DNA from: Iphione sp. A-MEVVRFRX5
Lineage: Eukaryota
Assembly (NCBI GenBank): GCA_976226885.1
Contig: OZ320314.1
Coordinates: 106,330,001 to 106,394,000, forward strand
Reading direction: 5' to 3'
Length of the DNA stretch: 64,000 nt
Part shown: positions 31,107-61,932 of the stretch, one piece after another
Layout of the letters: every line of letters starts with the position of its first letter
Numbering within the stretch: the first letter of the stretch is position 1
The notes under the pieces: generated by a model
Databases searched by the model: none
The model's input: the letters and a program-made list of their open reading frames with translations, nothing else
What the model was told of the DNA's origin: nothing
Position numbers and translations under genes: made by a program

Positions 31107-32825
31107 ATGACAGACCAAGCTGCAGAGATTGAGGTGGTAAAGTTCAGCTCAGGTCCGGACACGGATTCTGAAATAACTTTCCCCTCTCTCCAGTGTGGGC
31201 AAGTTCCACCCCCTGGGGGGGATCTTGACGACACCCAACCCGATCCAGCCCTGGATCTTGGGAAGGGGTCGGCAGCCGGGCCGGTTCTGGCCTTGGGAGG
31301 TTCCGGTTCCGGAACCCCCAGGAATCCAGCTGCACCCAAACACCCATCTAGGAGTTCAGCCTCAAAGAACTCGGCCTCCAAGGACCCCAAGCCGGGGACC
31401 TCCAAGTCGGGAGGACCGAGACCTGGAGGCAAGAGCGGAAGCACCCCCAAGCCGGGGGGCACTCCCAAGCCGGGAGGAACCTCCAACCATGGAGGGAACT
31501 CCAAGGGAGTGGAGACCCCCAAGACCGGGGGATCCAAGTTGGAGGTGGCGTCCAAGGCCATCCCGGAACCCCGGGGCAGGCCGGCGAAGAAACGGAAGAG
31601 ACGGGTCCGTTCTCGATCGGGGTCCTCTTCGGACTCATCGAGATCGCGATCCGACTCGAGAGGCAGACACGACTCGAGGGGACACTCTCGTCGGTCAAGC
31701 TTGGGGAGTTGGGGAAGTCTCTTCTCCAACGACCAAATGCTCATGGCCATGAGGTGCATGGCCGAAACCTGCGCTGACCGCATGGGGCTCCACGGACGGA
31801 GCGAGACTCCGCCAGACAGACGCCACAAGCGGAGGAGGTACTACGTGTCCTCCTTGGATTCCTCCAGCGAGGCGGAGGACGAGTGGACCCTGACGGATGG
31901 GGCCTCAGTCATCCCGGACACTCCCTTGGACGACCCAAGGGACGACCCGATGGACATCGACAACGCGGGCCCTTCGATGCCGGACGTCGTCCAACCGGAC
32001 CCGGCGACCCCGGTCCCTGCCCCGCCGGTGACCGCCCAGGGCGGGCTAGATGAGTTCCAGGTGGAGAGACCGGCGTCAGAGGACCGCACCACGAAGGCGG
32101 CGTCACCGGCAGTAGAGCGACTCATGTCGACCTACTGGAACTACCCTCTGACGCGGTCCAAAGCCAAGGAACTTACAGATACCTTGGAGCGGCCGGAGAA
32201 CCTGACGGTCCTAAAGTGGACCAAGCTGAACCCGGAGCTGGTGCTCCGGGAAGGAGATGTGAGCCGGGACCGACAGACGGCCGAGATCATGCATCTAAAC
32301 CAGTTCGCCGCCCTGCCGCTGATCGAGATCACTAGCGCTTACGACGCCGGCACGCCCTTGGACCCGAAGGAGGTCATGACGAGGGTGACGACGTCGCTGC
32401 GCCTGATGGGGAGAGGATCGCTCCTCTCCAACCACCAGAGGCGCGACATAATCCGCTTCAGGCTGCCGCCAGCGTACAGACGACTCTGTCAGACGGGACC
32501 GCAGGACGATTGGGAGCTTCTCCTAGGGAAGAATATCCCTGACCGTGTGAGGGAGTGCTCCGAGGCAAAGAAGCTGGAGCAGACCCTCACAGTCCGGCGG
32601 CCACCGAGACCAGCATCGGCACCCCCCAGGCAGTCAGGGCAGCAGCAGCAGTCCAACAGGCCGGGGTACAGCAGCAGTCAGAACAGCCGCAGCAGCCACA
32701 GCAGCAACAGCAGCAGGGACAACAGACCGCGGCCAAAAAACGGGCAGCGCCGGCAGGCCAAGAGGCCTGCCAACAGCCACAACAACAAGAGCAGCCAGCG
32801 CCACCAGAAGCAGAGGAGGAAGTAG
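31107..32825 (+). CDS. DIRS ORF1 gag-like protein, 572 aa
   Basis: Open ATG-started ORF upstream of pol. The central block (RPENLTVLKWTKLNPEL...QRRDIIRFRLPPAYRRLC...LLGKNIPDRV) resembles DIRS gag cores. It is flanked by PKPGG, RS-rich and Q/S/N-rich low-complexity tails. Confidence 0.85.
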   Translation: MTDQAAEIEVVKFSSGPDTDSEITFPSLQCGQVPPPGGDLDDTQPDPALDLGKGSAAGPVLALGGSGSGTPRNPAAPKHPSRSSASKNSASKDPKPGTSKSGGPRPGGKSGSTPKPGGTPKPGGTSNHGGNSKGVETPKTGGSKLEVASKAIPEPRGRPAKKRKRRVRSRSGSSSDSSRSRSDSRGRHDSRGHSRRSSLGSWGSLFSNDQMLMAMRCMAETCADRMGLHGRSETPPDRRHKRRRYYVSSLDSSSEAEDEWTLTDGASVIPDTPLDDPRDDPMDIDNAGPSMPDVVQPDPATPVPAPPVTAQGGLDEFQVERPASEDRTTKAASPAVERLMSTYWNYPLTRSKAKELTDTLERPENLTVLKWTKLNPELVLREGDVSRDRQTAEIMHLNQFAALPLIEITSAYDAGTPLDPKEVMTRVTTSLRLMGRGSLLSNHQRRDIIRFRLPPAYRRLCQTGPQDDWELLLGKNIPDRVRECSEAKKLEQTLTVRRPPRPASAPPRQSGQQQQSNRPGYSSSQNSRSSHSSNSSRDNRPRPKNGQRRQAKRPANSHNNKSSQRHQKQRRK

Positions 32826-32919
32826 AGGTGGGTGCTCCCTCGTCTTCTCCTTCTCCTCTTGTGCATGCTACCGAATTGTGTACGTCCCCCCCCCTGGACA
32901 TTGAGATTGTTCCAGGACC

Positions 32920-34648
32920 ATTCAGAGCAGGCAGGCTGGCAGACAGAGGTGACAATGGGACGCCCTGACGACCAGGACTTACATCAGGAGCTTAGCCAGG
33001 GGAGTGACCCTGGAACTCACGGGACTGCCATCCCAGGACCGCGCCCCTTCCATTCCGGAGTCCCACAAGGACTTCGAGATTTTCCGCAGGCTGGTAGACG
33101 GCCTGCTGGAGGAAGGGGTGGTGGAGGAGGCCTCGCCGTCGGCACGAGAGTTCGTGTCGACGATCTTTTTGAGGCCCAAGAAAGACGGATCACACCGGAT
33201 TATCCTGAACTTGAAAAAGTTCAACCAGTGGGTCCCCCACCAGCACTTTAAGATTGAGAGCCTTTCATCCTTCTTACCTCTGGTGGGGAGAGATTTCTAC
33301 TTCACCTCAGTAGACATCGTACACGCCTACTTCTCGGTTCCGGTGAGGGACCGAGACAGAGATTTCCTCCAGTTCATACTGGGGGAACGTAGGTATCGAT
33401 TCACGTGCCTCCCGAACGGACTGGCATCCGCACCGCGGATGTTCACCCAGATGATGCGGGCAGTGCTGGGAGACGTGCGGCAACGCACAGACGCGATAGT
33501 GTCGGCTTACCTGGACGACATTATCCTCTGCCACAGTGATGCAGCAGTAGTTGCCCAGGACACGCGTGTACAGGTGGAGACCCTCCAGGAGTTGGGTTTT
33601 CTGGTCCACCCAGAGAAATCCGTACTGCGACCTGTGAAACGCATCGAGCATCTGGGATTCGTGATTGACTCGGAGTCACTCACGGTCCGGCTACCGGGAG
33701 CCAAGGTGGAGGAGATAAAGAATGTTTGCAGGGATTTCCTGTCCAAGGACTCCCTCTCGGTCTGGCAGCTAGCTGCCTTGGCCGGCAAACTGCAGGCAAC
33801 GGCGAACGCCATACCGCAAATAAAGGATCCACCAGTGCAGGTGGAGATGTACACGGACGCCTCCAAAACGGGGTGGGGTGTATATGTGGAGACGACAGAC
33901 CGGTCATACGGAGAGGCCTGGACCACGAAGATGGCGCGAAGGCACATAAACGAGTTGGAGCTATGGGCTGTGAAGGCAGCACTCAAGCGCGAGGAACACC
34001 TGTGCTCAGGGAAGCACGTGCGCGTGCACACGGATAACTCAACGACCCTGCTTACAATTCAGAACAAAGGGTCAGCCAGGTCCCCGCCATGCAATGACCT
34101 AGCCAGGGAGATCCTGGTGTTTTGTGAGAAGCGCGACATCACGCTCACTATGGCCTTTTGCCCGGGGGTCGACAACGTTGAGGCAGACGAAGCAAGCCGT
34201 CGATTCAAAGACTGCGGGGAGTGGGCTTTGAACCCAGACGTGTTCACCACCCTCCTCGAACAAGAAGGGGGGGGCGCGCATGTACATTGACATTGATCTG
34301 TTTGCATCCAGCCTCAACCATAAATGCGATAGATATGTCTCCTGGACCTATGATCAAAATGCCTTTGCAACCGATGCCTTTACCCTTGACTGGTCAGGGC
34401 TTAATGCACTTATTTTCCCTCCCTTTGTCGTTATTCCCAGGGTGCTGCAGAAGATCCGCCGAGAGAGGCCGTGGGGGCTGCTGGTCATACCGTACTGGAA
34501 GACCCAGCCCTGGTTCAACGCAGCCAGGACGCTCCCTCGCCGAGCAGAGAGGAGAATCCCGGTGGACCGGGACACGCTGATACGGGGAGCGCAGGAGCAA
34601 CACGGAGGCGCAGGGAACGGAATGTCCCTGTGGATATTGACCCTCTGA
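32920..34648 (+). pseudogene. DIRS pol (RT, RNase H, DNA N6-adenine methyltransferase-like domain), disrupted
   Basis: FRAGRLA (frame of ORF 32555) shifts at about 32950 to QWDALTT..RGVTLEL. RT motifs RPKKDGSHRIILNLK, FTCLPNGLASAP and YLDD are present, as are RNase H motifs YTDAS, INELEL, HTDNST and NVEADEASR. A frameshift at the G8 run 34267-34274 separates the MTase-like segment (DIDLFAS, DAFTLDW, FPPF, LVIPYWKTQPWF). Confidence 0.92.
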
Positions 34649-35595
34649 CGGACAAGCTCCGGGGCGTCGGCATACCGGACGCGATAGCGACCCGCATGGC
34701 GGAGGGCTGGTCGACCTCGTCCAAAAAGAACTACCTCTCTTTGCTGACGAGGTTCGAGGCCCACTGCGTGGAGCACCAAGTTGACTCGAGGGCACCCACC
34801 CTGGTGCAGGCGCTCGAGTTCCTCAAGGGACTGGCCCGGGAGGGCCTGTCCTACTCGTACATCAACTCGGGCAGGTGCTTGCTCTCCAGCTTCGTGATAC
34901 TGGAGGGCAACCTGACATTCGGCAACCACCCCCACGTGACCAGGTTTATGAAGGGGGTACGCAGGGCCAGGCCCTTCGTAGCAAAGTTCAAGGAGGTCTG
35001 GGACGTCGGCCCAGTCCTCAGAGAACTGGCCAAGTGGGGTGAGGCTCACACCCTCAACCTGGAGCTGCTGACGAAGAAGACCATCACGCTTTGCCTTCTG
35101 GCCTCTGGCCAGAGGGTACAGACGCTGCAGGTGACCAGACAAGCGGACGTACGCTTCGAACACGACGCCTGCTACATCCGAGTCTCGGGTAGACTCAAGC
35201 ACTCCAGGGACACGTTTGAGAATCCCACGCTGATTTTCAAACCGTTTGAGGACAGGTCACTGTGCGTGTATGAACACCTGGCAACCTACATCGCGGCGAC
35301 TGACGCCTTCACGCACAAAGGGGCCTTGTTCATAGGCTACTCTCACAAGACCACCCTGGCCAAGTACACGAAAGACACTCTCAAGGCGTGCGGCTTGGAT
35401 ACAGACAAGTTCACCGCCCACAGCACGAGATCTGCATCCACGAGCAAAGGGTTGCAGATGGGACTGCCCCTGGACACGGTCCTGAAAGCTGGTGGGTGGT
35501 CGGGCGAGTTGACCTTTACCCGGTTCTACCGAAGGCCGATTAGCCAGGAACAAGTCTTCAGCCGCACGATCCTTGAGAGCGCGCAAACCACATGA
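34471..35595 (+). CDS. DIRS tyrosine recombinase, 374 aa
   Basis: Catalytic set visible: ASGQR (R), RLKHS (K), AHSTRS (H-x-x-R), GGWS (W), RFYRR (Y). An N-terminal SAM-like phage-integrase region is present. The ORF overlaps the MTase frame, as usual in DIRS. Confidence 0.93.
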   Translation: MGAAGHTVLEDPALVQRSQDAPSPSREENPGGPGHADTGSAGATRRRRERNVPVDIDPLTDKLRGVGIPDAIATRMAEGWSTSSKKNYLSLLTRFEAHCVEHQVDSRAPTLVQALEFLKGLAREGLSYSYINSGRCLLSSFVILEGNLTFGNHPHVTRFMKGVRRARPFVAKFKEVWDVGPVLRELAKWGEAHTLNLELLTKKTITLCLLASGQRVQTLQVTRQADVRFEHDACYIRVSGRLKHSRDTFENPTLIFKPFEDRSLCVYEHLATYIAATDAFTHKGALFIGYSHKTTLAKYTKDTLKACGLDTDKFTAHSTRSASTSKGLQMGLPLDTVLKAGGWSGELTFTRFYRRPISQEQVFSRTILESAQTT

Positions 35596-51802: not shown

Positions 51803-51833
<31 letters not shown>

Positions 51834-51850
51834 ATTTTGTCTCTGTAATA

Positions 51851-51887
51851 TTACCGAGCGATCAATTAATCGCGTTATAGTCGGTAA
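51851..51887 (-). other. 3'-terminal bulged stem-loop of the LINE
   Basis: Outer 7-bp stem TTACCGA/TCGGTAA, inner 5-bp stem GCGAT/ATCGC, 6-nt loop, 17 nt from the poly(A). Confidence 0.6.
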
Positions 51888-52320
51888 ACAGGGTCCGTTA
51901 ACTACGCCTCCATCAAGGCCTTTATCCCTGTGATACTCATAACATCAAAATTTAACTAACAACAAAAGTAACATAACTGACTTTTCCAAATCCTTATTGC
52001 CTATACTTAACATATTCTCTGCCTTGAATATCTTAGCATGATACCATGATAACATGAAGTTTTGTGAAAAAGAAATTGTATAACCGTTTATCTTTCCTCA
52101 AATTCTTTCTCGCAATTTACTCTTTATATTTCGTCTTTAATATTTTACATTGCTTGCATTGCCGGATCATAGAAATATAATGCCTTTATGGAACGAGTAT
52201 GGGTATAATGTTCATGGTTATGATGACATTAATAATGATAATGATGATGATTACAGTGGGGCTTCCGGACTTGTCATAGAACTTCGTGTGATCTGTCCAA
52301 ATTAGTACATAGAACATTCC

Positions 52321-55110
52321 TCATGGTACTCTATTGTTTGCCTTGTCATACCTATCCCAAAGCTCCTTGTGTAATTTAGTCTTAAACTTATGTAAGCTAT
52401 CTTCCATTTTCAAGCTATCTGATATCCTATTCCAGCCCTGACTTCCTTGATAACTCCAGCTGTCTCTGTAGATTGTCCGCTTTACCTTCCTTAGAATAAT
52501 TTGCCTTCCCCTACGACCTCTATTTTTAACTAGATAGTGCTCATCCCCTACCCCTATGCATTTGTGTACCTGTACTATGGCATGTTTTTCCCTCTCTAAC
52601 CATATTGGCATTATCCTGTTTCTCTTCCTATAATCCCGAAGTTCTTCTACTCCTCCTTTCAACGCTACTTTATACACCCTATTCAATTTTTGCTGAACTG
52701 CTGTACTCCCCCGTTTTCCCAGTACTGCCTGTCCATATGTCAACATCGGCTCAATCATAGTCTTTACTATCCTCAGTGCTATTTCGGTGGTAATACAATT
52801 TCGCATTCGCTTCATCATGTACTCCTTATAGGCCATCTTTTTTATGGTTCCATCTACATGTTCACGAAAGGTTAGCCTTTCATCCACTGTTATGCCCAAG
52901 TAGTTGTACCTTTTGACCTGATGGATGACTTTTCCACCCAGATTGAGACCACCATACTCCTCACCTTTTATCGTCTTTCGTAAAGTACATAACATATACT
53001 TTGTTTTCGCAACGTTTAACAAGAGCCTATTTGTCTTACACCATACAAAAACCCTATTCAGGCAACTCTGGGCTTTATCCATTACACTATCCCAGTCGTT
53101 TCCCGAGAACAGCAAGGCGGCGTCATCCGCATATAGGATTATTTCCCCCTCATGAACAGTTTCTGTTATGTCATTGATAAATATCAAAAAGAGTAGAGGA
53201 CCCAACAAGCTACCTTGTGGGACCCCACACGTTATCTGCTGTTTGTTTGAATAGTGACCATTTACCCTAACCCGCTGGCTCCTATTCTGAACATACTCCC
53301 ATATTAAGCTTGCCATCCCTTTCCCACAAGACCTCTCTACCTTTCCACATAGCAACATATGGTCTAACGAATCGAAGGCTTTTGAAAAGTCGAGGTATAC
53401 GTGCACAACCTTCTGTCCCTCGTTTATATTTTCATACGTATTTTGTAAGAGCCTTCCTATAGCATCTGTTGTTGAGCGCTTTTTCCTAAAACCATATTGG
53501 TTGTCTACCAGGAAGTTATTTTCCTCTAGGATCTCAACAATTCTATTGTAGAACAACCTTTCCATTACTTTTGATCCTATCGGCAGCACGCTTACCGGCC
53601 TATAGTTTCCAACCTGGTACCTGTCCCCCCCTTTCCATATAGGCGTCACTACTGCCTCCTTCCATCTACTTGGTACTTTGCCTGTCGACCATATCATCTT
53701 CATAATGTGAGTCAGTTGCATCATTGCCTTTTTCATTAGACTACTCCCTATGTTCTCCATACCCGACGCTTTCTTCTCCTTTAGTAATCCTATAGCCTTC
53801 CATACCATCCCTTGAGTTATCTCATCCGCACCATCCCTTTCCTGCCTATCCCAGGTACCAGCATGGTTCCCTTGTCCAATCTGCAATTGATCTCTAATTC
53901 TTTTACCTACGCCTACGAAAAATGTGTTTATTTCCTCCCCCACATCCTTTCCCCTTATTATTTTATCATCCATCTTTATGACAATGTCCTCATCAGTTGT
54001 CTTATTGTAAATCAGTAGCCTGTTTAATTTTCTCCAAAAAGATTTACTATCATTCTTATTCAGATCCAGTAATTTCTGATAGTACTCATTTCTTGCCCTA
54101 TTCATCTCCCTTTTGCAAACTTTCTTAGCATTTTCATATGCACCCCAGTTTCCCTCGTTTCTTTCCTTATACAGCTTTCGCAATGCCTTCCTCTTTGTCT
54201 TCAGTAAGTACACTATCCTCCTATCTACCCATGGGGATGTCTCTTTGTTACGAACGTTATACCATTTCAGTGGGGCCAGTCTATCAAGCACATGGGCAAT
54301 TATCCGCTCCCATGTTATAACCAACTTATCCACATCCTGTTCATTATAGAAATCACCCCAGTCATAGCTCACTAGCGTTTCTCTGAATTTAGCGTCTGTG
54401 TACTCCCTGTAGTCCCGTTTTCTAGCTCTTTTTATCCCATGTTTCCCCGCGGCCCCTTTCATTTGCACTTTAATCCCTTGATGGTCACTGATTGCTACAT
54501 AGTCAACTTCAGCCTTACTCCCTAATCCTACTTCCTCATACCAGACATCCAACAAGCTTAGACCCTTTTTATATATATATGTCGCCTCCTTTACATGGTT
54601 TTCTAACCCATAACTTAGGCATGTGTTTTCTAATAGTCGCTTTTCCCTTGTGTTCCGTAATAAATCAATATTAATATCTCCTGTCACCACCATCCTACCT
54701 TTATCTTGTCCCTTATCCATTTCCCTGTCTAAGATGTTCACTGCTGTTTCCACATTTCCTAACGGTGGACGATAGACACTAATCAAATGTAATAGTTGGA
54801 CCTTCTTATATTGTATATTTAGCCTCAGATATTCTATCTCCTTTGTGCTTGCATAACCTTCCACTGTTGCGTCATAGCATGCTTTAACATATACCAAAAT
54901 CCCCCCGACTCTTTTGCCTTCCCCCCTATCTTGCCTGAAGATATTGTAACCACGCCAAGCTATCGCTTGGTTAAACACTTTTTCATGTAGCCAAGTTTCT
55001 GTAATGATAACAATATCATATGTGTCCCCCAAGTAAGTTTTTAACTCCTCCCGTTTTCTTAGATAGCTTCTGATGTTGATACAAAACACCTTTATACCAT
55101 CAGCTTCCAT
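52321..55110 (-). CDS. LINE ORF2: APE endonuclease plus reverse transcriptase (929 aa from the first ATG at 55110; track ORF extends to a TTG at 55125)
   Basis: APE motifs CINIRS, ITETWL, VYRPP, TGDINID and ISDH. RT motifs NYRPVSVLP, QYGFRK, YLDFSKAFD, GVPQGSLLGPLLFLIFINDI, YADD and YLGITVD. No stops. Confidence 0.97.
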   Translation of the reverse strand: MEADGIKVFCINIRSYLRKREELKTYLGDTYDIVIITETWLHEKVFNQAIAWRGYNIFRQDRGEGKRVGGILVYVKACYDATVEGYASTKEIEYLRLNIQYKKVQLLHLISVYRPPLGNVETAVNILDREMDKGQDKGRMVVTGDINIDLLRNTREKRLLENTCLSYGLENHVKEATYIYKKGLSLLDVWYEEVGLGSKAEVDYVAISDHQGIKVQMKGAAGKHGIKRARKRDYREYTDAKFRETLVSYDWGDFYNEQDVDKLVITWERIIAHVLDRLAPLKWYNVRNKETSPWVDRRIVYLLKTKRKALRKLYKERNEGNWGAYENAKKVCKREMNRARNEYYQKLLDLNKNDSKSFWRKLNRLLIYNKTTDEDIVIKMDDKIIRGKDVGEEINTFFVGVGKRIRDQLQIGQGNHAGTWDRQERDGADEITQGMVWKAIGLLKEKKASGMENIGSSLMKKAMMQLTHIMKMIWSTGKVPSRWKEAVVTPIWKGGDRYQVGNYRPVSVLPIGSKVMERLFYNRIVEILEENNFLVDNQYGFRKKRSTTDAIGRLLQNTYENINEGQKVVHVYLDFSKAFDSLDHMLLCGKVERSCGKGMASLIWEYVQNRSQRVRVNGHYSNKQQITCGVPQGSLLGPLLFLIFINDITETVHEGEIILYADDAALLFSGNDWDSVMDKAQSCLNRVFVWCKTNRLLLNVAKTKYMLCTLRKTIKGEEYGGLNLGGKVIHQVKRYNYLGITVDERLTFREHVDGTIKKMAYKEYMMKRMRNCITTEIALRIVKTMIEPMLTYGQAVLGKRGSTAVQQKLNRVYKVALKGGVEELRDYRKRNRIMPIWLEREKHAIVQVHKCIGVGDEHYLVKNRGRRGRQIILRKVKRTIYRDSWSYQGSQGWNRISDSLKMEDSLHKFKTKLHKELWDRYDKANNRVP

Positions 55111-55385
55111 TCTAACACCATACAACCCAAAACCCTGTATGTACCATTTGCATAACTTTTCTGTTTGATCAGACCCCTAACACAATAACATCCATATATG
55201 TTTAGAACTCCAAGCCCTGCGCCCTGATGTGGGAACCATATGTTCTGTGTAACATACATGTTCCCAAGTATGGCACTTTGTTGTAGACGATCTAACTGTG
55301 AGACAGTTTCCCCCCGACCCTACTCATTAGTAACTATTTACACTATTTACACCCCCCTGTACCAAAGTTACCAGATATTAGTGGT

Positions 55386-56033
55386 TTAATATATTTTCTC
55401 TAGGAAATTACTAATCAGCTTTGCCAGTTTTCCCTTACCCTCTTCACCTTGGTGACACCCATCTGGAAGACCTCTATATTTTACCACATCCCTTCTTCGA
55501 ACCCTCCTATGTGTCATAGTTCCCACCCTACATGTGATGTTTCCATTCATATGATTGATATGAGTGATGTATTCATTAACATGCCACAGGGCATTGTCTA
55601 ACAAATATTGCTTGAAACTCATACCATTCAAATACCAACAATTGTTCAGCTTGATATTGTATCGAAACAGACTTAGACCAAATATAGTCGCGAAATAGAA
55701 TTTTGTCTCAGGCAATGCACTCTTCAGTAACTCATTTGTTTCATAAAACTTGTTTGTTACACTATTTACCAAGTCACTCAGATTGTCATGTCTCACATCC
55801 ACCCAAGTTCTCCAAGTTCCCTGTACCCACCTTGCGTTTTTCCGAGTTATATTACAGATCCCTGCCATTAAAATTATCCCATCAGATTCTTGGTATGATC
55901 TGTCCTGGCAAATCACCTCTGCAATGTCTTCAATTGCATATCCCGGATAAACTCGCACCGTGATTGCCACACCTCGTGCCCTTAGTATCTGCTGCAGACC
56001 CCTCCCCCGGCTGTCGCATATCAGATACAACAT
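55386..56033 (-). CDS. Stand-alone SGNH/GDSL-type esterase, 215 aa
   Basis: SGNH blocks appear in order: I CDSRG (S8), II YPG (G31), III AGICN (N61), V PDGCH (D191, H194). ATG is in a good context (A at -3). Confidence 0.8.
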   Translation of the reverse strand: MLYLICDSRGRGLQQILRARGVAITVRVYPGYAIEDIAEVICQDRSYQESDGIILMAGICNITRKNARWVQGTWRTWVDVRHDNLSDLVNSVTNKFYETNELLKSALPETKFYFATIFGLSLFRYNIKLNNCWYLNGMSFKQYLLDNALWHVNEYITHINHMNGNITCRVGTMTHRRVRRRDVVKYRGLPDGCHQGEEGKGKLAKLISNFLEKIY

Positions 56034-56282
56034 CTTGTAATGGAAAAAGTATGCTTATCTGACCAGTGGTTCCTTCTACTATATCTTGCAGACTTCTGTA
56101 TTGCCACACTCTGATTGCTGGTCACTTGTACTTGGACAGGTCACTCAGCCGCCGCTGTTGTGGCTTTCCACGTATGTCTGCCCCCGTTCGTCACCACTTG
56201 GTTGCAGATGTCTTAAGTATCTTAGCCCCCTTGGGGTCTGCCGATGCACTGGATCTTCATGGAAATAAAAGTAAACTATTAG

Positions 56283-56882
56283 TACATGCTATCGCATATT
56301 ATCCCCAATTCCCTCTCTTTTACCTCACAAAATAATTCAAGACACCGCTATACATGCTGTCGCATGTTGTAACACGTTTACACTACTATTTGATATAATT
56401 ATATATCTGGCGGTACATCAACTGGCATGCTGTCACATACTGTAATATTTCATTGTCGATAGTTCCTTGTAATATTCTTCCGCTATCTCAAGATATACCA
56501 GTGGAATGTTTATCATTTCCTATGGTTATTTTACTCGCTTCATATTTCACGCACATGCTATCGCATGTTTTCATCCTATAATACTAGCTTAGATACACAT
56601 CCCATATCTCCAAGTTATTTATAATATCCCACTCCATGTCATACTACTGCCTGCACTTTATTTCCTATCTTGATACAACTAAAATGATAAATGTACAAAT
56701 GTATACCTACCTTACAAATTCCTTTATCTGTTTACCTTTGTCAAATCGGTGAGTCAAGACCGCCTTATCTTGTTTTAGAATATCCTCCTTCAACTCCCTA
56801 TGTGAGAACAATGTTTATTTGTCATTTTTGTAGTCAGCAAGGCTTTCTCTATTCATATATGTATGTACATGCTATCGCATGT
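56283..56882. repeat. Five dispersed copies of the hairpin motif ACATGC-TRTC-GCATGT in the ORF1-esterase spacer
   Basis: Copies at 56283, 56351, 56425 (degenerate), 56552 and 56866. Confidence 0.85.
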
Positions 56883-56940
56883 ATAGAGAACCAATTTAAT
56901 GCACATTTTAGTCTAACCTTCCCAATTATCATCCCCACAT

Positions 56941-58422
56941 TTACCCTTCCCCTAGAATTGCCTCCCCTTGTTCTACTCCCCCTACTGCCATCGCTACGTC
57001 GCTCTCCTCCTCCTCTTCATCTACCTGTGGGAACAACTCACTGCGTACCACCATCAATAGACGTCCCAGCATGTTCTTACCCTTATAGGCAGTACCGTGC
57101 GTCACCAGATATCCCATCCCACCGGCTGCCCCCCAAAACATCGACTTACTAGCCGAAACAAGTTCCTTCTTCATTGTACCTTTTAAATCTTCTCCTAAAC
57201 TCGGTGAGCTTGAGAATTTCGCCATTAGAATGTCTCTCATAACCTTCACTCTGTCCTTATCCCAGGTTGTTGTTGCTGTTATCCGCTTACCTACCGATAT
57301 CAGCTCCATCGGGTCCGTCGTCGAAAGTACCTCGTGTTTCGCCCGTTCGTTGTTTGCGTGATTTGCCTTTTCCCACTGATACGCCTGCTCAGCAGAACTT
57401 ACCACCAAGTCTTTATAAGAGAAGGGTGATATGTGCAAATTGCTAAGACTAGCCTCTTTGCCTTGAAAAACTACTCTTTTTTCTGTGTGCACTTGTTTTG
57501 CCGCGGCCAGTGATAAGTCTTCCGGCAACTTTCGGATCTCACTCGGCTTGTATGGCAGGTCGTCTACGTACAAAGTGTTGTTCATTACTTTCGCGCTCCT
57601 CCCCTGTACTTTTGCCAACAGTGCTATGGACCGTAAATCCACTTGTTGCTCTCGCTGAGTTTTCGTTAAGTCGTCACTAATCCAAATCTTGGTTCCCTTC
57701 AGCTTGCCTCTGTTCTTCATAATGCTTGACTTGTCCATGTTTCTCACAAATTTCACCACTACATCCCTGTGGCATTTTACAGACTCCCTCCTGGTTTTAT
57801 AGCAAACTGCTATGTCCCTCTGTTCTAAATCCAACTCAAGCTTTAGGAACAGCTCTTCCGCCACTGCATAAGCGTCGTTTATCTCACCACCCAGTCCACT
57901 GATGACTATTGTGTTTGCCCGTACACTTTTGTCGATTTGTTCCAGCTGCACTTTCTGATCTCGCAGCTCTTTCCTCAGAATTTGGTTTTCCGCTATAACC
58001 GCCGCAGTCTTACCCCGCAGCTCCTTCTGTTCAATTTCTAGTTCCTCATTTTTTGTCTTTAGTTTCTCCATCTCCTTATTCATCTTCTCGATGTTCCCAT
58101 CAGTGCTCCCCCATACCATCTTTGCATCTTCAATACTCCTCTCCACCGACTCCATCCTTCTGTCATTTTTCTTCAACCAGCGCAGTATACTCCCCATATT
58201 TGCTTTTAGGGACGTCAATGCAGTCGGACTTCCCGTTCCTCGCTTGCGTTTCGATCTTCTTTTTTTACTTGGTTGTTCCTCTTCGTCAAACTCATCATCC
58301 CCTTGAGATAGTTGTGAGTCTGAATCTCCAATGCCCTCTAGTATCTCCGTAATTGTTTGATCGTCTCCCTCCTCTGAACCGTCCTTCTGATTCTCCAGAT
58401 TCCTCCCTGCTTGGCTTGCCAT
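56941..58422 (-). CDS. LINE ORF1: acidic N-terminus, NLS, coiled coil, RRM/CTD, fused to a C-terminal NADAR (YbiA-like) domain (493 aa from ATG 58422; track ORF extends to a TTG at 58446)
   Basis: KKRRSKRKR NLS; heptad coiled coil; L1-ORF1-like RANTIVISGL...VVVKF...KLKGTKIWISDDLT. NADAR-like segment at about 57034-57474: FQGKEASLSNLH, SSAEQAYQWEKA, WDKDRVKVMRDILMAKF, LVSASKSMFWG, GKNMLGRLLMVVRSEL. Confidence 0.9.
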   Translation of the reverse strand: MASQAGRNLENQKDGSEEGDDQTITEILEGIGDSDSQLSQGDDEFDEEEQPSKKRRSKRKRGTGSPTALTSLKANMGSILRWLKKNDRRMESVERSIEDAKMVWGSTDGNIEKMNKEMEKLKTKNEELEIEQKELRGKTAAVIAENQILRKELRDQKVQLEQIDKSVRANTIVISGLGGEINDAYAVAEELFLKLELDLEQRDIAVCYKTRRESVKCHRDVVVKFVRNMDKSSIMKNRGKLKGTKIWISDDLTKTQREQQVDLRSIALLAKVQGRSAKVMNNTLYVDDLPYKPSEIRKLPEDLSLAAAKQVHTEKRVVFQGKEASLSNLHISPFSYKDLVVSSAEQAYQWEKANHANNERAKHEVLSTTDPMELISVGKRITATTTWDKDRVKVMRDILMAKFSSSPSLGEDLKGTMKKELVSASKSMFWGAAGGMGYLVTHGTAYKGKNMLGRLLMVVRSELFPQVDEEEEESDVAMAVGGVEQGEAILGEG

Positions 58423-59258
58423 AGCTCTGGACTCCGCGAGTGTCAACTCTTGCCTTGCGTGACCTAATTACGTATCGGCCCCTGTCACCTTACCTTGACC
58501 CTTGACCTTGGTTGTCCGCAACTACCTTTCGAATTATAATTCACCCTAAATCCACATTTATGATTCGTTACCTGTTCTCCCTTCCACACCTAGAGATTCT
58601 CTGACCATTCCTACCAATTCCTGACTGTTAAATTCTGTATTTTCCTGAGGGTTTATCCTATATCCACGTTCCAAGTCTCCGGGGTTCCCGCCTCACACGT
58701 CTACCTCCCTACAGCGCCATATATATCGAGCAAGCTGAGCCGTATTTGGTCCAGGATTGTTTGGATTATGTTTGATTTATTTGTGCCTACCGGAAAATGT
58801 TTGCTCGTGCTGATCCTATTCTATTCAGCGCCCGCAATTCAGGTGCATTGATGTCCCCGGATGTTCATGACTCCGCATGCATGCATTTTTGTAGTTCTCT
58901 TCACTGGCATGTCTGAAGATGTCAGTCTCCTCTGTGAAGCGTTTCTTGTATCCACCCTACGTCGATGGGGAGGACATGATTCGTTACGTTTCTTGTGACG
59001 ATGTGATTAACGACTTGTAGTTACCTCCGTTCTTTTTGAGAGTGCAGGGTGCTTTTTCCACAGGTCTCTTTTTTCAGGAAATCTGTACATGTGTCGACGT
59101 CTACCTTCTTTTCTCATTAGGAAGCCTTTCATGAATGGCGACTACATCAATAATGCACTACTTTGAGGTCAGACCTGACTCCTCTTTATCCTGCAGTTTC
59201 GACCCACCACGGTCTGCAAACGCTGTGGCTGGCAGTGCTACAACCCCCCCCCCCCCGC

Positions 59259-59289
59259 CACACACAAACACACACACACACACACACAC
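59259..59289. repeat. (CA)n microsatellite after a C13 run
   Basis: Direct reading of the sequence. Confidence 0.9.
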
Positions 59290-59341
59290 TCCCATTTCTA
59301 CGTGCGGCAGGTGAAGCTGTCATCCAAGCACGGCGGGGATG

Positions 59342-59731
59342 TTAGTGCTTTGTTTTAAGCCAGACATGCGCCATGATTACCAGGGCGAACGTTTTGGCGG
59401 TCGACACGGCTCGGACCGTTTGGCAGACAGGTGAACTAGTGTCGCCCTCTACCGGGGATGAATAGTAAAAGGCCTTGCCTGTCTTCGTGGCGCTGGACCC
59501 GCATGCCAGACTGTTGTCAGATACGGATACAGTTCCAGGTCTGGGATCACCGCCCTTCTTTGCGGAGTCCCGCAGTTCTCTGACATCATGAAAAGGTCCG
59601 TCCGCTCCATCTCCCGTTCCCTCTGCCACACATGCTCTGGTAAATGGAGACGTGTTCTTTGTGGTTTCTTTGTCTCGGCAATCCAACTCTAGGCACCATC
59701 TGCGATGTCCTGGCCTCCTTCCTGTAACCTG
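59342..59731 (-). other. Candidate host exon (unverified)
   Basis: Strong polypyrimidine acceptor tgtgtttcttctCAGCAG, then a GC/CpG-rich stretch with one frame open for about 130 codons. No recognisable homology. Confidence 0.25.
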
Positions 59732-61932
59732 CTGAGAAGAAACACACGCCGTCGCCTGCCCTGCCCCCTAACGGGTCGAGGGCCAGGCGCAACATTGCAG
59801 GACTGACAACCTGAATAAGCCATACAGCACTAGTACAAGAAAAGGAGGGCGAACATTACCGGTCCCATCCGGTATGCTTTCAGCATATATTTTAAGAGAT
59901 TTGTAGGTTTCCGCCTCTAACTCCCTCCCCCTCTTTGGCAGCCGCAAATGGAATCCCTAGTAGGGTTTCATCACAACATATGTGACCAACTTCGATATGG
60001 TTGCGTGGGCCCTGAAGGAGTGTGCTTTTTTTGGGCGGCATCTCTACACTTCCAAAATGGGTTCTTCCTGATCACACCCAGCGATAACTGGTGGTGGTGA
60101 TCGCGGAAAGTATACCCCAGGAAAGTATTTACTTTAGAGCTTCAATTACACAATGGTCCGGACATCTGCATTTACAGTTGACGGCAAGGGAGAAGGTGGT
60201 GGGCTACGTAGAAATCCCCTCCCGCTCCCTCCAGTAATATCCTAGAGTACTTCCTCACATAGATGATCTAGCCAGGGGCGCTTGCTAAACCTAACAAAAC
60301 CTGCCAAACGGCATCGACAGGCCATCGTCAGCTTTGTGGACATGCACCAAGGCTATTTCCTGAACCTACGTGCCACCTGGTAAATCTTCTTTCGGGTCCA
60401 AAGAACGATGGCTACAGGACAGTCATTGCTGCCTGACCGTTGTCAAAACGGAAACAAGACGTCCCCACTCTCTCACCCCCCAAAAAAAACACATGCGCGC
60501 GCACACACACACACAAACTCATAAAAGTGTGCAAGGCAATACGATAAGATAGATATTCGCGCCAACCGAGTCCATTTGTCGAACACCAGAGGGAAAGCTT
60601 ACCTGGTGGCTATGGTATGGTACGTATTCCGTCCTCGCTTGCCAATGCTCCCGAAATGCCACACTCCCTGCATTCCCCCTTTGAGCCCTTCCCCCTCAAC
60701 CAACTCCCGTTTTTGTCGAGTATGTCGATATGAAAGGGAGGCAAGGCTAAACCTTGTGGTAGGTACATGTACCCCAGCAAGAATTTGATTCCCATCAACA
60801 CAAAGACAGGATGGCAAGAAGATCACAGCTTCTCCATTGATGATGCGACCAGTCATACGTGATAAATACAACTTAATGCCCCGCAAGAAAAATTCGCTTT
60901 TGGCTAGCCAAAATCCCTGCAGTATGCTATATTCGATATTGAAAAACAATGGCAAATCGCCTAAGTATATAATATTATTTTGATTGATTTTGATTGAATT
61001 CCATTAGGTTTATTTTTTTGAGTGAATATCTCCACCCAAACAAAGCGTTTTCAAATCTGACAATTCTAAATTTTGGTTCAATGTATAATTTAAAAATAAA
61101 TGGGATTCCATATCAATTATTTGTCGTCGATTACAGGAGGAACTGCAGACGTTGTTAAGGGTAAGAAGGGATTATTCTCATATGTAGAATAAAAGCATAC
61201 CTGTATATGTACTCAGCTATTTTACTGTTATTTTCTCTTGGACATAACCTTCAGGTATAAAATAAATAAATTTAGTGTTCCTTTTCTCCAGCAGATTTTC
61301 AAACCAGACTAAGATCCCTTCTAGAAGGAAAGTGGTATGGCAAGCTGACACCTATACATCGCCGGGGTAGTCTACAAAGCTTCTGCTTCCTGTGCCGCGA
61401 TCAATCTACATGTATATCTTCGCTTCCGTTGAAACTGGTGCACATCATATATATACACCGGCGTGTATGTATACAAAGAAGACGACCGGTTCTCTAATAT
61501 ACGTACCTTCATGTATACTTGTCGTGCAATAGTTACAACTGTATGTGTTGGATGTAGCCACAAGAAAAACCCGAAGCTCTAAGCCTCTAGAGCACTTATG
61601 GACTGACAAAATAACTTGATATATGAACCATCTTTGATATTTGAGTGGGACCGGAGGTAAGATATCGCTTCGCTGACATCGTAGCGATCAGTATGCGAGT
61701 GGCGGAACGAACCAAATGGAATGTGCAAGATGTATAAAGCACGGGCAAACCATCCATTGACCTGCTGAGGCTCTCGACTATCCCTCTAGTACATGTGATA
61801 TTATCACGCGGGTATAACTTTCATGATAGATGTGGGTCTAGCTATAGGACTGTACCTTTTAAAAATAGATGTCCTTGAGAAGTCTTTAGAAAGGCATGGA
61901 AGACTCAGTTCCTAGCTTCCGCGTGGCCAGGA

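What the first reader, a model, noticed from the sequence alone, without database searches (positions are those of the whole stretch)
51806..58720. Tricistronic LINE carrying two accessory enzyme folds (NADAR and SGNH esterase)
Seen: one co-oriented unit reading 5' leader, ORF1(CC-RRM-NADAR), 0.9-kb spacer, esterase ORF, 275-bp spacer, APE-RT ORF2, 3'UTR, stem-loop, A28, with no stop or frameshift in any ORF. Established: CR1-group LINEs normally have two ORFs, and where an esterase occurs (some CR1, L2 and RTEX elements) it is part of ORF1p. Inference: a young element with a three-gene layout whose RNP may combine a nucleotide/ADP-ribose-related module and a lipid/acyl-modifying module. I know of no description of this architecture but cannot confirm novelty without a search.
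Basis: partly seen in the sequence, partly recalled or inferred. Interest (0 to 1): 0.92.

Follow-up and report, generated by a model that had tools for sequence, protein, structure and literature searches.

The report
Three-gene LINE with NADAR and esterase
This is an intact jumping gene (a LINE retrotransposon) that carries three genes instead of the usual two, adding an ADP-ribose-related NADAR domain and a free-standing esterase; the same layout recurs in other public assemblies, so it is a real, apparently undescribed variant and not an accident of this copy.

Summary
On the minus strand, 51806-~58720 holds three intact co-oriented ORFs, a 3' stem-loop and A28.

- **ORF1p:** an L1-like coiled coil-RRM-CTD fused to a YbiA-type NADAR domain (Pfam E 1e-24, fold matches).
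- **Middle ORF:** a 215-aa SGNH hydrolase (pLDDT 96) with an invariant Ser/Asp/His triad.
- **ORF2:** APE-RT.

Chance nesting is rejected. Homologues of the middle ORF are mostly stand-alone 200-230 aa proteins. In three other public datasets they sit directly after a NADAR-bearing ORF. APE-RT follows wherever the contig reaches that far, including five complete insertions with different flanks.

Three caveats:
- This copy's NADAR has Ser where the YbiA-family catalytic Glu sits. Four LINE relatives keep Glu.
- The 5' end is unverified and no TSD was found.
- The RT clade (CR1 group?) could not be placed. The poly(A) tail is atypical for CR1, and L1/Tx1 looks unlikely.

NADAR in LINE ORF1 was noted briefly in 2025 (oyster Repbase families). 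I found no description of the three-ORF layout. The scan's first readers noted the same layout 19 times elsewhere in this genome; those notes are unchecked.

Verdict: a new variant of a known kind.

The parts
58423..58720 (-). 5' leader (5' boundary uncertain)
   Evidence: Sequence upstream of the ORF1 ATG. Strand-biased composition runs on to about 59000. No TSD and no second copy fix the end.
56941..58446 (-). ORF1 (501 aa from TTG; first ATG at 58422). Acidic tract and KKRRSKRKR basic patch, coiled coil, RRM-CTD, NADAR.
57919..58209 (-). ORF1p coiled coil (aa 80-176)
   Evidence: Long helix in the AF2 model. Weak Pfam coiled-coil hits. Aligns to the L1 ORF1p trimer 2yko.
57481..57912 (-). 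ORF1p RRM plus CTD-like domain (aa 179-322), L1 ORF1p type II architecture
   Evidence: Foldseek to human L1 ORF1p 2yko/2ykp, E 2e-5, TM 0.69 over about 205 columns. Other RRMs hit more weakly.
57031..57477 (-). ORF1p NADAR (YbiA-type) domain (aa 324-472)
   Evidence: Pfam PF08719 E 1.3e-24. PDB sequence hits to YbiA 2b3w and 8bau. Foldseek 8bau E 1.8e-8 with rmsd 2.6, YbiA TM 0.73.
57142..57156 (-). NADAR active-site stretch S431-A-S-K-S435. Ser (TCG) sits where the YbiA-family Glu (E125 of 8BAU) and Asp130 are.
   Evidence: Alignments. Residue roles from PMC11543638. Codons.
56034..56940 (-). Spacer 1 (907 nt, 25 AUGs) with five copies of a 6-bp hairpin ACAUGC-GAYA-GCAUGU at 56284-56299, 56352-56367, about 56426-56441, 56553-56568 and 56867-56882
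   Evidence: four motif sites within 2 mismatches, counted as 6 strand matches, against 0.06 expected; the fifth, more degenerate copy is; all five fold as predicted.
55386..56033 (-). Middle ORF: free-standing SGNH hydrolase, 215 aa. Block I CDSRG (S8), GICN (aa 58-61), block V DGCH (D191, H194).
55111..55385 (-). Spacer 2 (275 nt, 9 AUGs)
52321..55125 (-). ORF2, APE-RT (934 aa from TTG; first ATG at 55110). APE about 54451-55098, RT 52885-53613, YADD present.
   Evidence: Pfam RVT_1 E 2.7e-34, Exo_endo_phos_2 E 8e-5, Exo_endo_phos E 5e-4. 49 homologues found.
51834..52320 (-). 3' UTR with a terminal stem-loop at about 51843-51891
   Evidence: dG -23.5 kcal/mol for the 92-nt stretch, z -2.46.
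51806..51833 (-). Poly(A) tail, 28 A

Best explanation
This is a full-length, apparently retrotransposition-competent copy of an APE-type LINE. It belongs to a set of invertebrate-type LINE families that carry three sense ORFs.

ORF1p is an L1-like RNA-binding chaperone (coiled coil, RRM, CTD) with a YbiA-type NADAR domain fused at its C-terminus. A separate 215-aa gene encodes an SGNH hydrolase with a Ser-Asp-His triad. ORF2p supplies the endonuclease and reverse transcriptase.

Shown: the domains, the intactness of all three ORFs, and the recurrence of the gene order in other assemblies.

Inferred:
- One poly(A)+ transcript carries all three ORFs. The two downstream ORFs are reached by reinitiation or internal entry, because the spacers hold 25 and 9 AUGs.
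- ORF1p coats the RNA.
- The esterase plays the membrane/lipid-linked accessory role proposed for ZfL2-1-type ORF1p esterases, here made as a separate, probably sub-stoichiometric protein.
- The NADAR module binds or removes ADP-ribose-type adducts on the element's RNA or cDNA. That would be a counter-measure to nucleic-acid ADP-ribosylation. In this family, which has Ser in place of the catalytic Glu, it may act as a binding-only or altered-chemistry module.
- The 3' stem-loop plus poly(A) is the site where ORF2p starts target-primed reverse transcription.
For: - Three intact ORFs, A28 and the 3' stem-loop.
- NADAR Pfam E 1.3e-24. The ORF1 model matches the L1 ORF1p trimer and NADAR structures.
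- Middle ORF model pLDDT 96.2, SGNH fold.
- 83 cluster representatives are homologous to the middle ORF, mostly stand-alone proteins of 200-230 aa. D7, S8, D191, G192 and H194 are invariant in 49 aligned sequences.
- Same order, NADAR ORF then esterase ORF then APE-RT ORF:
  - five complete insertions with different flanks in ENA ERZ26222911;
  - two further diverged families in that assembly;
  - ERZ25767047, loci L005 and L006;
  - Logan SRR25320648, locus L008, which shows the NADAR ORF and esterase ORF before the contig ends.
- The L005 element also ends in poly(A).
- P0002 fuses PHD, coiled coil, SGNH, NADAR and CCHC in a single ORF1p. The two enzyme modules therefore co-occur in another LINE-type ORF1 as well.
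- NADAR biochemistry: PMC11543638 and PMC11125620. Esterase role: PMC3905857.
Against: - This copy's NADAR lacks the YbiA-family Glu and the nearby Asp (S431, and S435 or M436). Mutating the equivalent residue abolishes efficient guanine de-ADP-ribosylation in E. coli C7 NADAR.
- The canonical block III Asn of SGNH enzymes is Cys in most of this esterase family (GIC[D/N]).
- No TSD and no defined 5' end for this copy.
- No expression or translation data.
- The hairpins in spacer 1 are not conserved in L008.
- The RT tree does not resolve whether the three-ORF elements form one clade.
- One esterase homologue (L007) stands alone, with no LINE genes nearby.
Confidence: 0.85

Rival explanations
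1. Chance composite. Two or three unrelated insertions (an ORF1-NADAR fragment, an esterase gene, a 5'-truncated LINE) happen to lie head to tail.
For: No TSD was found around the whole unit. The 907-nt spacer is long. One homologous esterase ORF (L007) is solitary.
Against: The same order recurs in several diverged families and in independent insertions with different flanks, across three other datasets. Strand-biased composition is continuous across the unit. All three ORFs are intact.
Confidence: 0.02
2. The true architecture is bicistronic. ORF1p normally continues into the esterase as one CC-RRM-NADAR-esterase protein, or the two are joined by splicing or recoding. The separate middle ORF would then be an artefact of mutation in this copy.
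For: P0002 shows SGNH and NADAR in one polypeptide. In some relatives the gap between the NADAR ORF and the esterase ORF is only 3-56 nt.
Against: In every relative seen, the esterase is called as its own ORF after a stop. The 83 homologues are mostly 200-230 aa and begin 1-15 residues before the DSRG motif. Spacers range from 3 nt to 1.4 kb. In P0002 the domain order is the reverse (esterase before NADAR), and its esterase is not detectably similar to this one.
Confidence: 0.05
3. An already catalogued family. The element belongs to Repbase or Dfam families already deposited, for example the oyster LINEs with NADAR ORF1 that Repbase labels Tx1. Only the write-up would then be new.
For: PMC12477816 reports YbiA-type NADAR domains in ORF1 of several Repbase Tx1 families of Crassostrea gigas. 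The layout is abundant in public assemblies.
Against: - ORF2 here is 929 aa and has no C-terminal CCHC.
- ORF2 finds no L1 ORF2p chain in the PDB sequence set even at E 10, though I did not check that the set holds one.
- No searchable paper describes a three-ORF LINE with a separate esterase.
- Repbase and Dfam themselves could not be searched.
Confidence: 0.35
4. The accessory modules are decaying passengers with no role in retrotransposition. They would be a captured host NADAR and a captured host esterase carried neutrally.
For: The catalytic Glu of NADAR is lost in this copy. ZfL2-1 ORF1p is dispensable in HeLa assays (PMC3905857). The bdelloid extra ORFs showed no clear departure from neutrality (PMC5408684).
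Against: The esterase triad is invariant across 49 sequences that share only 21-29% identity with this ORF. The NADAR E43 and K50 equivalents are kept in all five LINE NADARs compared, and Glu125 is kept in four. Both modules persist together across deeply diverged elements (RT core identity about 37%).
Confidence: 0.1

Closest known systems
Esterase-type (type IV) ORF1p LINEs: ZfL2-1, CR1, RTEX (Kapitonov & Jurka 2003; Schneider et al. 2013, PMC3905857)
   Same: An APE-RT LINE that carries an SGNH-fold esterase with a conserved catalytic triad upstream of ORF2. It has a 3' stem-loop. ORF2 is about 930 aa with no CCHC tail.
   Different: There the esterase is a domain of ORF1p behind a coiled coil, and those ORF1ps lack RNA-binding domains. 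Here the esterase is its own 215-aa ORF, and a separate L1-like CC-RRM-CTD ORF1p exists. The profile of this esterase family hits the ZfL2-1 esterase (4c1b) only at E 0.39. This element has a poly(A) tail.
L1/Tx1-type LINEs with type II ORF1p (CC-RRM-CTD); the Repbase 'Tx1' families of Crassostrea gigas said to carry NADAR in ORF1 (PMC12477816)
   Same: The ORF1p core matches the human L1 ORF1p trimer fold. It has a poly(A) tail. It has a NADAR domain in ORF1p, as reported for the oyster families.
   Different: ORF2 is short (929 aa), has no CCHC, and finds no L1 ORF2p chain in the PDB sequence set even at E 10. The paper mentions no third ORF or esterase. Whether those Repbase families are the same lineage could not be checked.
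Stand-alone GDSL/SGNH ORF3 of bdelloid Vesta LTR retrotransposons and Athena Penelope-like elements (PMC5408684)
   Same: A free-standing GDSL-type ORF carried as an extra gene by a retroelement, with catalytic residues intact.
   Different: A different retroelement class, and a different position (after pol there, between ORF1 and ORF2 here). No NADAR partner is present.
NADAR hydrolases: E. coli YbiA, Phytophthora NADAR 8BAU, DarT1-associated NADAR antitoxins (PMC11543638, PMC11125620)
   Same: The same fold (TM 0.68-0.73, 25-26% identity). The E43 and K50 equivalents are kept (E353, K360).
   Different: Here it is fused to a LINE ORF1p. In this copy the YbiA-family Glu (E125) and Asp130 are replaced by Ser, and by Ser or Met, so guanine-ADPr hydrolase activity is doubtful. 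LINE relatives keep the Glu.
Ectocarpus Gypsy lineage with a NADAR domain at the N-terminus of Pol (PMC12477816)
   Same: A retrotransposon that has acquired a YbiA-type NADAR domain.
   Different: An LTR element, with the fusion to Pol rather than to the Gag-like ORF1p. It has no esterase.

Membership tests
APE-type non-LTR retrotransposon (LINE) | ORF2 with an N-terminal APE-like endonuclease and a central RT carrying the YxDD motif | tested here: met
   Pfam RVT_1 E 2.7e-34, Exo_endo_phos_2 E 8e-5, Exo_endo_phos E 5e-4. LYADDAALL, ITETW, GDIN and SDH can be read in the translation.
APE-type non-LTR retrotransposon (LINE) | A 3' tail (poly(A) or a simple repeat) and target-site duplication | tested here: inconclusive
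   A28 is present. No TSD of 9 nt or more begins at the tail.
APE-type non-LTR retrotransposon (LINE) | A multi-copy, dispersed family | tested here: inconclusive
   The window holds no second copy. A related family sits at 11 contigs with different flanks in another assembly. 19 unchecked first-reader notes report copies elsewhere in this genome.
CR1 group (CR1/L2/Rex1/Crack/Daphne/Kiri) | RT domain placed within the group in a phylogeny with labelled references | not testable with these tools
   No Repbase or Dfam references were available. A tree of 43 unlabelled RTs was unresolved.
CR1 group (CR1/L2/Rex1/Crack/Daphne/Kiri) | A 3' end of stem-loop plus short tandem repeat, not poly(A). Within the group, poly(A) is reported only for the ORF1-less Zenon elements (PMC13343379). 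| tested here: not met
   The stem-loop is present, but the element ends in A28 and it has an ORF1.
L1/Tx1 group | ORF2p of about 1200-1300 aa with a C-terminal Cys-rich (CCHC) domain and clear similarity to L1 ORF2p | tested here: not met
   ORF2 is 929 aa, and no CCHC is seen in the C-terminal 150 aa. phmmer against PDB sequences finds only weak R2 and group II RT hits and no L1 ORF2p chain, even at E 10.
L1/Tx1 group | Type II ORF1p: coiled coil, RRM, CTD | tested here: met
   Foldseek to 2yko/2ykp, E 2e-5, TM 0.69.
SGNH/GDSL hydrolase | The flavodoxin-like SGNH fold | tested here: met
   AF2 pLDDT 96.2. Foldseek probability 1.0 and TM 0.60-0.65 to GDSL lipases, sialate O-acetylesterases and PAF-AH.
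SGNH/GDSL hydrolase | Block I Ser and block V Asp-x-x-His (the catalytic triad) | tested here: met
   S8, D191 and H194 are invariant in 49 aligned homologues.
SGNH/GDSL hydrolase | Block III Gly-x-Asn (oxyanion hole) | tested here: inconclusive
   This ORF reads GICN. The family consensus is GICD, and only some members read G[IV]N[DN].
Type IV esterase ORF1p (ZfL2-1-like) | An esterase domain in the same polypeptide as an N-terminal coiled coil, with no RRM | tested here: not met
   The esterase ORF starts 6 residues before block I and has no coiled coil. The coiled coil and RRM are on ORF1p.
NADAR superfamily, YbiA family | PF08719 match above the gathering score, and the YbiA-like fold | tested here: met
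   87.7 bits against a cut-off of 35.1. Foldseek to 8bau and 2b3w.
NADAR superfamily, YbiA family | The conserved Glu (E125 of Phytophthora NADAR) that defines the YbiA family and is needed for hydrolysis | tested here: not met
   S431 (TCG) aligns to that Glu. P0001, P0002, L005 and L008 all have Glu there.
NADAR superfamily, YbiA family | The superfamily-wide Glu and Lys (E43, K50 of 8BAU) | tested here: met
   E353 and K360 align to them.

The most novel reading that the evidence does not exclude
LINE families that carry NADAR on ORF1p use it to strip ADP-ribose from guanines (or other bases or ends) of their RNA or nascent cDNA. If so, nucleic-acid ADP-ribosylation would be an anti-retroelement defence in invertebrate animals and these LINEs would encode the counter-defence. 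A large share of the 'metazoan NADAR genes' in databases would then be LINE ORF1s. The free-standing esterase would be a second, co-inherited accessory enzyme of the same RNP. The Ser-for-Glu family seen here would be a derived, binding-only or re-tooled variant.
Probability: 0.15. Interest if true: 0.85.

Novelty: new variant of a known kind. Interest (0 to 1): 0.62.

Why it matters
LINEs are textbook two-gene elements, and their ORF1 proteins are treated as RNA chaperones. Here there is a recurrent, conserved third gene (an SGNH hydrolase with an intact triad). There is also an ORF1p fused to a domain whose only well-characterised nucleic-acid activity is reversing base ADP-ribosylation.

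This gives two testable handles.

1. **What esterases do for retrotransposons.** That question has been open since 2003 and 2013. The enzyme can now be studied as a separate polypeptide.
2. **What eukaryotic NADARs do.** The NADAR papers state this is unknown for animals. A retrotransposon context suggests a conflict over ADP-ribosylated nucleic acids.

It also warns annotators that stand-alone 'hypothetical' 200-230 aa SGNH proteins and 'NADAR family proteins' in invertebrate assemblies can be LINE genes.

The long, AUG-rich spacers raise a further question: how are three cistrons translated from one LINE RNA?

Tried and rejected
- **Word-index search with the middle ORF:** nothing found. The exhaustive HMMER search was needed.
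- **Pfam and PDB sequence searches with the middle ORF:** no significant hit. Only the fold and the family profile show it is SGNH.
- **The search for related loci with the esterase alignment:** No metagenome scan was made.
- **Upstream ORFs of the nearest ORF2 relatives:** L002 (PHD-CC-RRM-CCHC) and L004 (CC-RRM only) have other ORF1 types and no esterase. ORF1 regions are therefore modular among related RTs.
- **TSD search:** k-mers and short blastn over 0.8 kb against 2.6 kb found nothing convincing.
- **Rfam on the element, E up to 1:** nothing found, so no HDV-like or hammerhead ribozyme was detected.
- **Hairpin motif of spacer 1:** not found in the L008 spacer. It is family-specific at best.
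- **RT clade placement:** PDB searches give only weak R2, retron and group II hits. Atlas names are generic. The tree of 43 unlabelled RTs is unresolved and does not group the window element with L005.
- **Tx1 membership:** considered and judged unlikely on ORF2 length, the missing CCHC and the absence of any L1 ORF2p hit.
- **E428 as a substitute for the missing Glu:** considered. It lies three residues upstream on the same predicted strand (aa 428-431), so by strand alternation it should face the opposite side. I did not inspect coordinates.
- **Kapitonov & Jurka 2003:** not readable here.


Full report
**1. Observation**

The element lies on the minus strand. The ORF listing gives three co-oriented ORFs.

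| Feature | Coordinates | Size |
|---|---|---|
| ORF1 | 56941-58446 | 501 aa from TTG; first ATG at 58422 |
| Spacer 1 | 56034-56940 | 907 nt |
| Middle ORF | 55386-56033 | 215 aa, ATG start |
| Spacer 2 | 55111-55385 | 275 nt |
| ORF2 | 52321-55125 | 934 aa from TTG; first ATG at 55110 |
| 3' UTR | 51834-52320 | 487 nt |
| Poly(A) | 51806-51833 | 28 A |

The 92-nt stretch just before the tail folds into a stem-loop (dG -23.5 kcal/mol, z -2.5). GC and AT skew are strongly one-sided from about 51.5 to about 59 kb, as expected for one A/G-rich sense strand.

The window has no other copy. I found no target-site duplication.

**2. The three proteins**

*ORF1p.* Pfam gives NADAR (PF08719) at E 1.3e-24 for aa 332-471, plus weak coiled-coil hits at aa 95-188. 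An AlphaFold2 model built on a shallow alignment has mean pLDDT 71, rising to about 90 in the NADAR part. It shows:
- a long helix at aa 80-176;
- an RRM-like alpha/beta domain with a small C-terminal domain at aa 179-322;
- the NADAR domain at aa 324-472.

Foldseek against the PDB returns:
- Phytophthora NADAR 8bau: E 1.8e-8, rmsd 2.6 A, 25% identity;
- E. coli YbiA: TM 0.73;
- the human LINE-1 ORF1p trimer 2yko/2ykp: E 2e-5, TM 0.69 over about 205 columns.

ORF1p is therefore a type II (L1-like) CC-RRM-CTD protein with a NADAR domain added at the C-terminus. An acidic tract and a KKRRSKRKR patch precede the coiled coil.

*Middle ORF.* Pfam and PDB sequence searches are blank, and so is the word-index search. 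An exhaustive phmmer search of 1.84 billion representatives finds 83 proteins with E up to 1e-3 (best 4e-15). Nearly all are 200-230 aa and match end to end.

In an alignment of 49 of them, D7, S8, Q142, N160, D191, G192 and H194 are invariant. The motifs DSRG(R), GIC(D/N)IT and DGCH stand out. They correspond to SGNH block I (Ser) and block V (Asp-x-x-His). The block III Asn is often replaced by Cys.

With this alignment AlphaFold2 gives pLDDT 96.2 and pTM 0.91. Foldseek matches GDSL-like lipases, sialate O-acetylesterases and PAF acetylhydrolase at probability 1.0 and TM 0.60-0.65. The family profile reaches the ZfL2-1 ORF1p esterase (4c1b) only at E 0.39. This is a distinct SGNH branch, not a close copy of the known LINE esterase.

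*ORF2p.* RVT_1 scores E 2.7e-34, with two weaker APE families. The catalytic motifs can be read directly in the translation: ITETW, GDIN, SDH, YADD.

**3. Is the three-gene layout real?**

| Source | What is seen |
|---|---|
| ENA ERZ26222911, P0135 family (205 aa, 26% identical to the middle ORF) | On 11 contigs. Five of six places shown read NADAR ORF (333+139 or 450-452 aa), about 325 nt, 205-aa ORF, about 350 nt, 944-aa APE-RT ORF. Neighbours differ each time (integrase, HECT, other RTs). |
| Same assembly, P0057 family | NADAR ORF ends 3 nt before the esterase ORF; an APE ORF follows |
| Same assembly, P0055 family | 447-aa NADAR ORF, 56 nt, 218-aa esterase, then APE, then RT |
| ERZ25767047, loci L005 and L006 | A frameshifted element with the same order and an intact 231-aa esterase ORF |
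| Logan SRR25320648, locus L008 | 470-aa NADAR ORF1 (NADAR E 1e-28), 1.38-kb spacer, 232-aa esterase ORF, then the contig ends |

The L005 RT core is 37% identical to ours. That element also ends in poly(A), about 260 nt after ORF2.

One homologue (L007) is solitary. A metagenomic ORF1-like protein (P0002, on L001) joins PHD, coiled coil, SGNH, NADAR and two CCHC knuckles in one chain. The esterase and NADAR modules therefore co-occur in yet another ORF1 design.

First-stage notes of this scan report the same layout 19 times elsewhere in this genome, some with TSDs around the whole unit. I could not check them and use them only as leads.

Chance nesting is excluded. A mutationally split ORF1-esterase fusion is very unlikely, because the esterase is a separate ORF in every relative and its homologues start just before block I.

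**4. The NADAR active site**

Schuller et al. give the mechanistically relevant residues of Phytophthora NADAR. E43 and K50 are conserved across the superfamily. E125 defines the YbiA family and is Asp in DarT1-associated NADARs and His in phage ones. Mutating its equivalent abolishes efficient guanine de-ADP-ribosylation (PMC11543638).

In the HMMER alignment to 8bau, E353 and K360 of ORF1p match E43 and K50. E125 aligns to S431, and D130 aligns to S435, or to M436 in the ungapped alignment to L008. The codons are TCG and TCG, at least two substitutions away from any Glu or Asp codon. This is not a single recent hit in an otherwise intact copy. It is probably a family trait.

P0001, P0002, L005 and L008 all keep Glu at this column. 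I therefore treat this copy's NADAR as a fold member that fails one defining catalytic feature. It may bind ADP-ribose-type ligands or use altered chemistry. Its relatives look catalytically competent.

**5. Spacers**

Spacer 1 contains five copies of a small hairpin, ACAUGC-GAYA-GCAUGU. Four sites match within 2 mismatches (six strand matches), where 0.06 matches are expected by chance; the fifth copy is more degenerate. All five form in the minimum-free-energy fold of the whole spacer. The L008 spacer does not contain them.

Spacer 1 has 25 AUGs and spacer 2 has 9. Simple leaky scanning to the downstream ORFs is therefore implausible, and reinitiation or internal entry has to be inferred. 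All three start codons have a purine at -3, and two have G at +4 (read). Rfam finds nothing in the element.

**6. Which LINE clade?**

I could not place the RT, because no labelled references were available. The indirect evidence is as follows.
- ORF2 is 929 aa with no C-terminal CCHC.
- phmmer against PDB sequences finds only weak R2, retron and group II RT matches and no L1 ORF2p chain, even at E 10. This argues against L1/Tx1, though I did not check that the set holds an L1 ORF2p chain.
- The best ORF2 relatives in public data are only 25-29% identical overall, and their ORF1 types vary.
- The 3' stem-loop and the ORF2 size fit the CR1/L2/Jockey side (from my own knowledge). A poly(A) tail is reported within the CR1 group only for the ORF1-less Zenon elements (PMC13343379).
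- A tree of 43 RT cores is unresolved and does not unite the window element with L005.

**7. Literature**

- Esterase as a domain of ORF1p in CR1, L2, RTEX and Penelope elements, preceded by a coiled coil and lacking RNA-binding domains: PMC3905857 and PMC4120745.
- Stand-alone GDSL ORF3 in bdelloid LTR and Athena elements: PMC5408684.
- NADAR in retroelements: a 2025 paper reports it in an Ectocarpus Gypsy Pol. It adds in one sentence that ORF1 proteins of several Repbase Tx1 families of Crassostrea gigas carry YbiA-type NADAR domains (PMC12477816).
- The NADAR papers state that the roles of animal NADARs are unknown (PMC11125620).
- Searches for tricistronic or three-ORF LINEs with an esterase, or for NADAR or DUF1768 with non-LTR elements, found nothing else.

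**8. Verdict**

It is an intact member of a recurrent three-ORF LINE design: ORF1p(CC-RRM-CTD-NADAR), a free-standing SGNH hydrolase, and APE-RT.

Each module was known in retroelements. The arrangement, and the linked inheritance of the two accessory enzymes across diverged families, appear undescribed, although Repbase may hold such consensus sequences. I class it as a new variant of a known kind.

The mechanism is inferred, not shown: one transcript, an esterase acting as a membrane/lipid accessory factor, and NADAR handling ADP-ribose adducts on the element's nucleic acids. It is weakened for this copy by the missing catalytic Glu.

Noticed in passing
window 56284-56882 (minus strand): Five copies of a 16-nt palindromic hairpin motif, ACAUGC-GAYA-GCAUGU, are confined to the ORF1-esterase spacer. 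Four sites match within 2 mismatches, against 0.06 matches expected by chance in the window; the fifth is more degenerate. All five form in the MFE fold. The motif is absent from the L008 spacer.
   Followed up: partly
window 31107-35595 (plus strand): A DIRS-like retroelement. One ORF carries RVT_1 plus RT_RNaseH (33004-34290). It is followed by an ORF with a tyrosine-recombinase (Phage_integrase) domain (34471-35595). A 572-aa ORF with no Pfam hit lies upstream (31107-32825).
   Followed up: partly
L001:40-1635 (protein P0002, ENA ERZ17083299): A single 531-aa ORF1-like protein combines a PHD finger, coiled coil, canonical GDS/GTND/DGLH SGNH esterase, NADAR and two CCHC knuckles. The same two enzyme modules are fused here, in the opposite order.
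   Followed up: partly
L007:7001-7633 (ENA ERZ25767047): A 210-aa homologue of the esterase stands alone. No NADAR or APE-RT remains are detectable within 7 kb on either side. It lies next to an 879-aa ORF with weak DUF6589 and Tesmin/TSO1 CXC hits. It may be a relic or a domesticated copy.
   Followed up: partly
L005 and L006 (ENA ERZ25767047, two contigs): The two degraded three-ORF elements share the same frameshift pattern. They also share upstream neighbours (a 372-aa ORF and a 65-aa ORF at similar offsets). This suggests a segmental duplication or a larger composite repeat, not independent insertions.
   Followed up: no
ENA ERZ26222911, place hzC8vKJa (no DNA held): The end of a second NADAR ORF (459 aa) followed by a 228-aa ORF with a weak Lipase_GDSL_2 hit lies about 5 kb upstream of a complete three-ORF element. 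Two elements of this kind sit close together in the same orientation.
   Followed up: no
window 59000-60500: The stretch just upstream of the element is noticeably GC-richer (0.50-0.52) than its surroundings (0.33-0.46). It holds a 114-aa minus-strand ORF (59342-59686). Whether it belongs to the element's 5' region or to the host is unknown.
   Followed up: no
L008:1602-2984 (Logan SRR25320648): A related element has an even longer ORF1-esterase spacer (1.38 kb). The spacer carries its own short repeats and AT-dinucleotide runs and an 82-aa ORF. Long spacers at this position recur, but their sequence is not conserved.
   Followed up: partly
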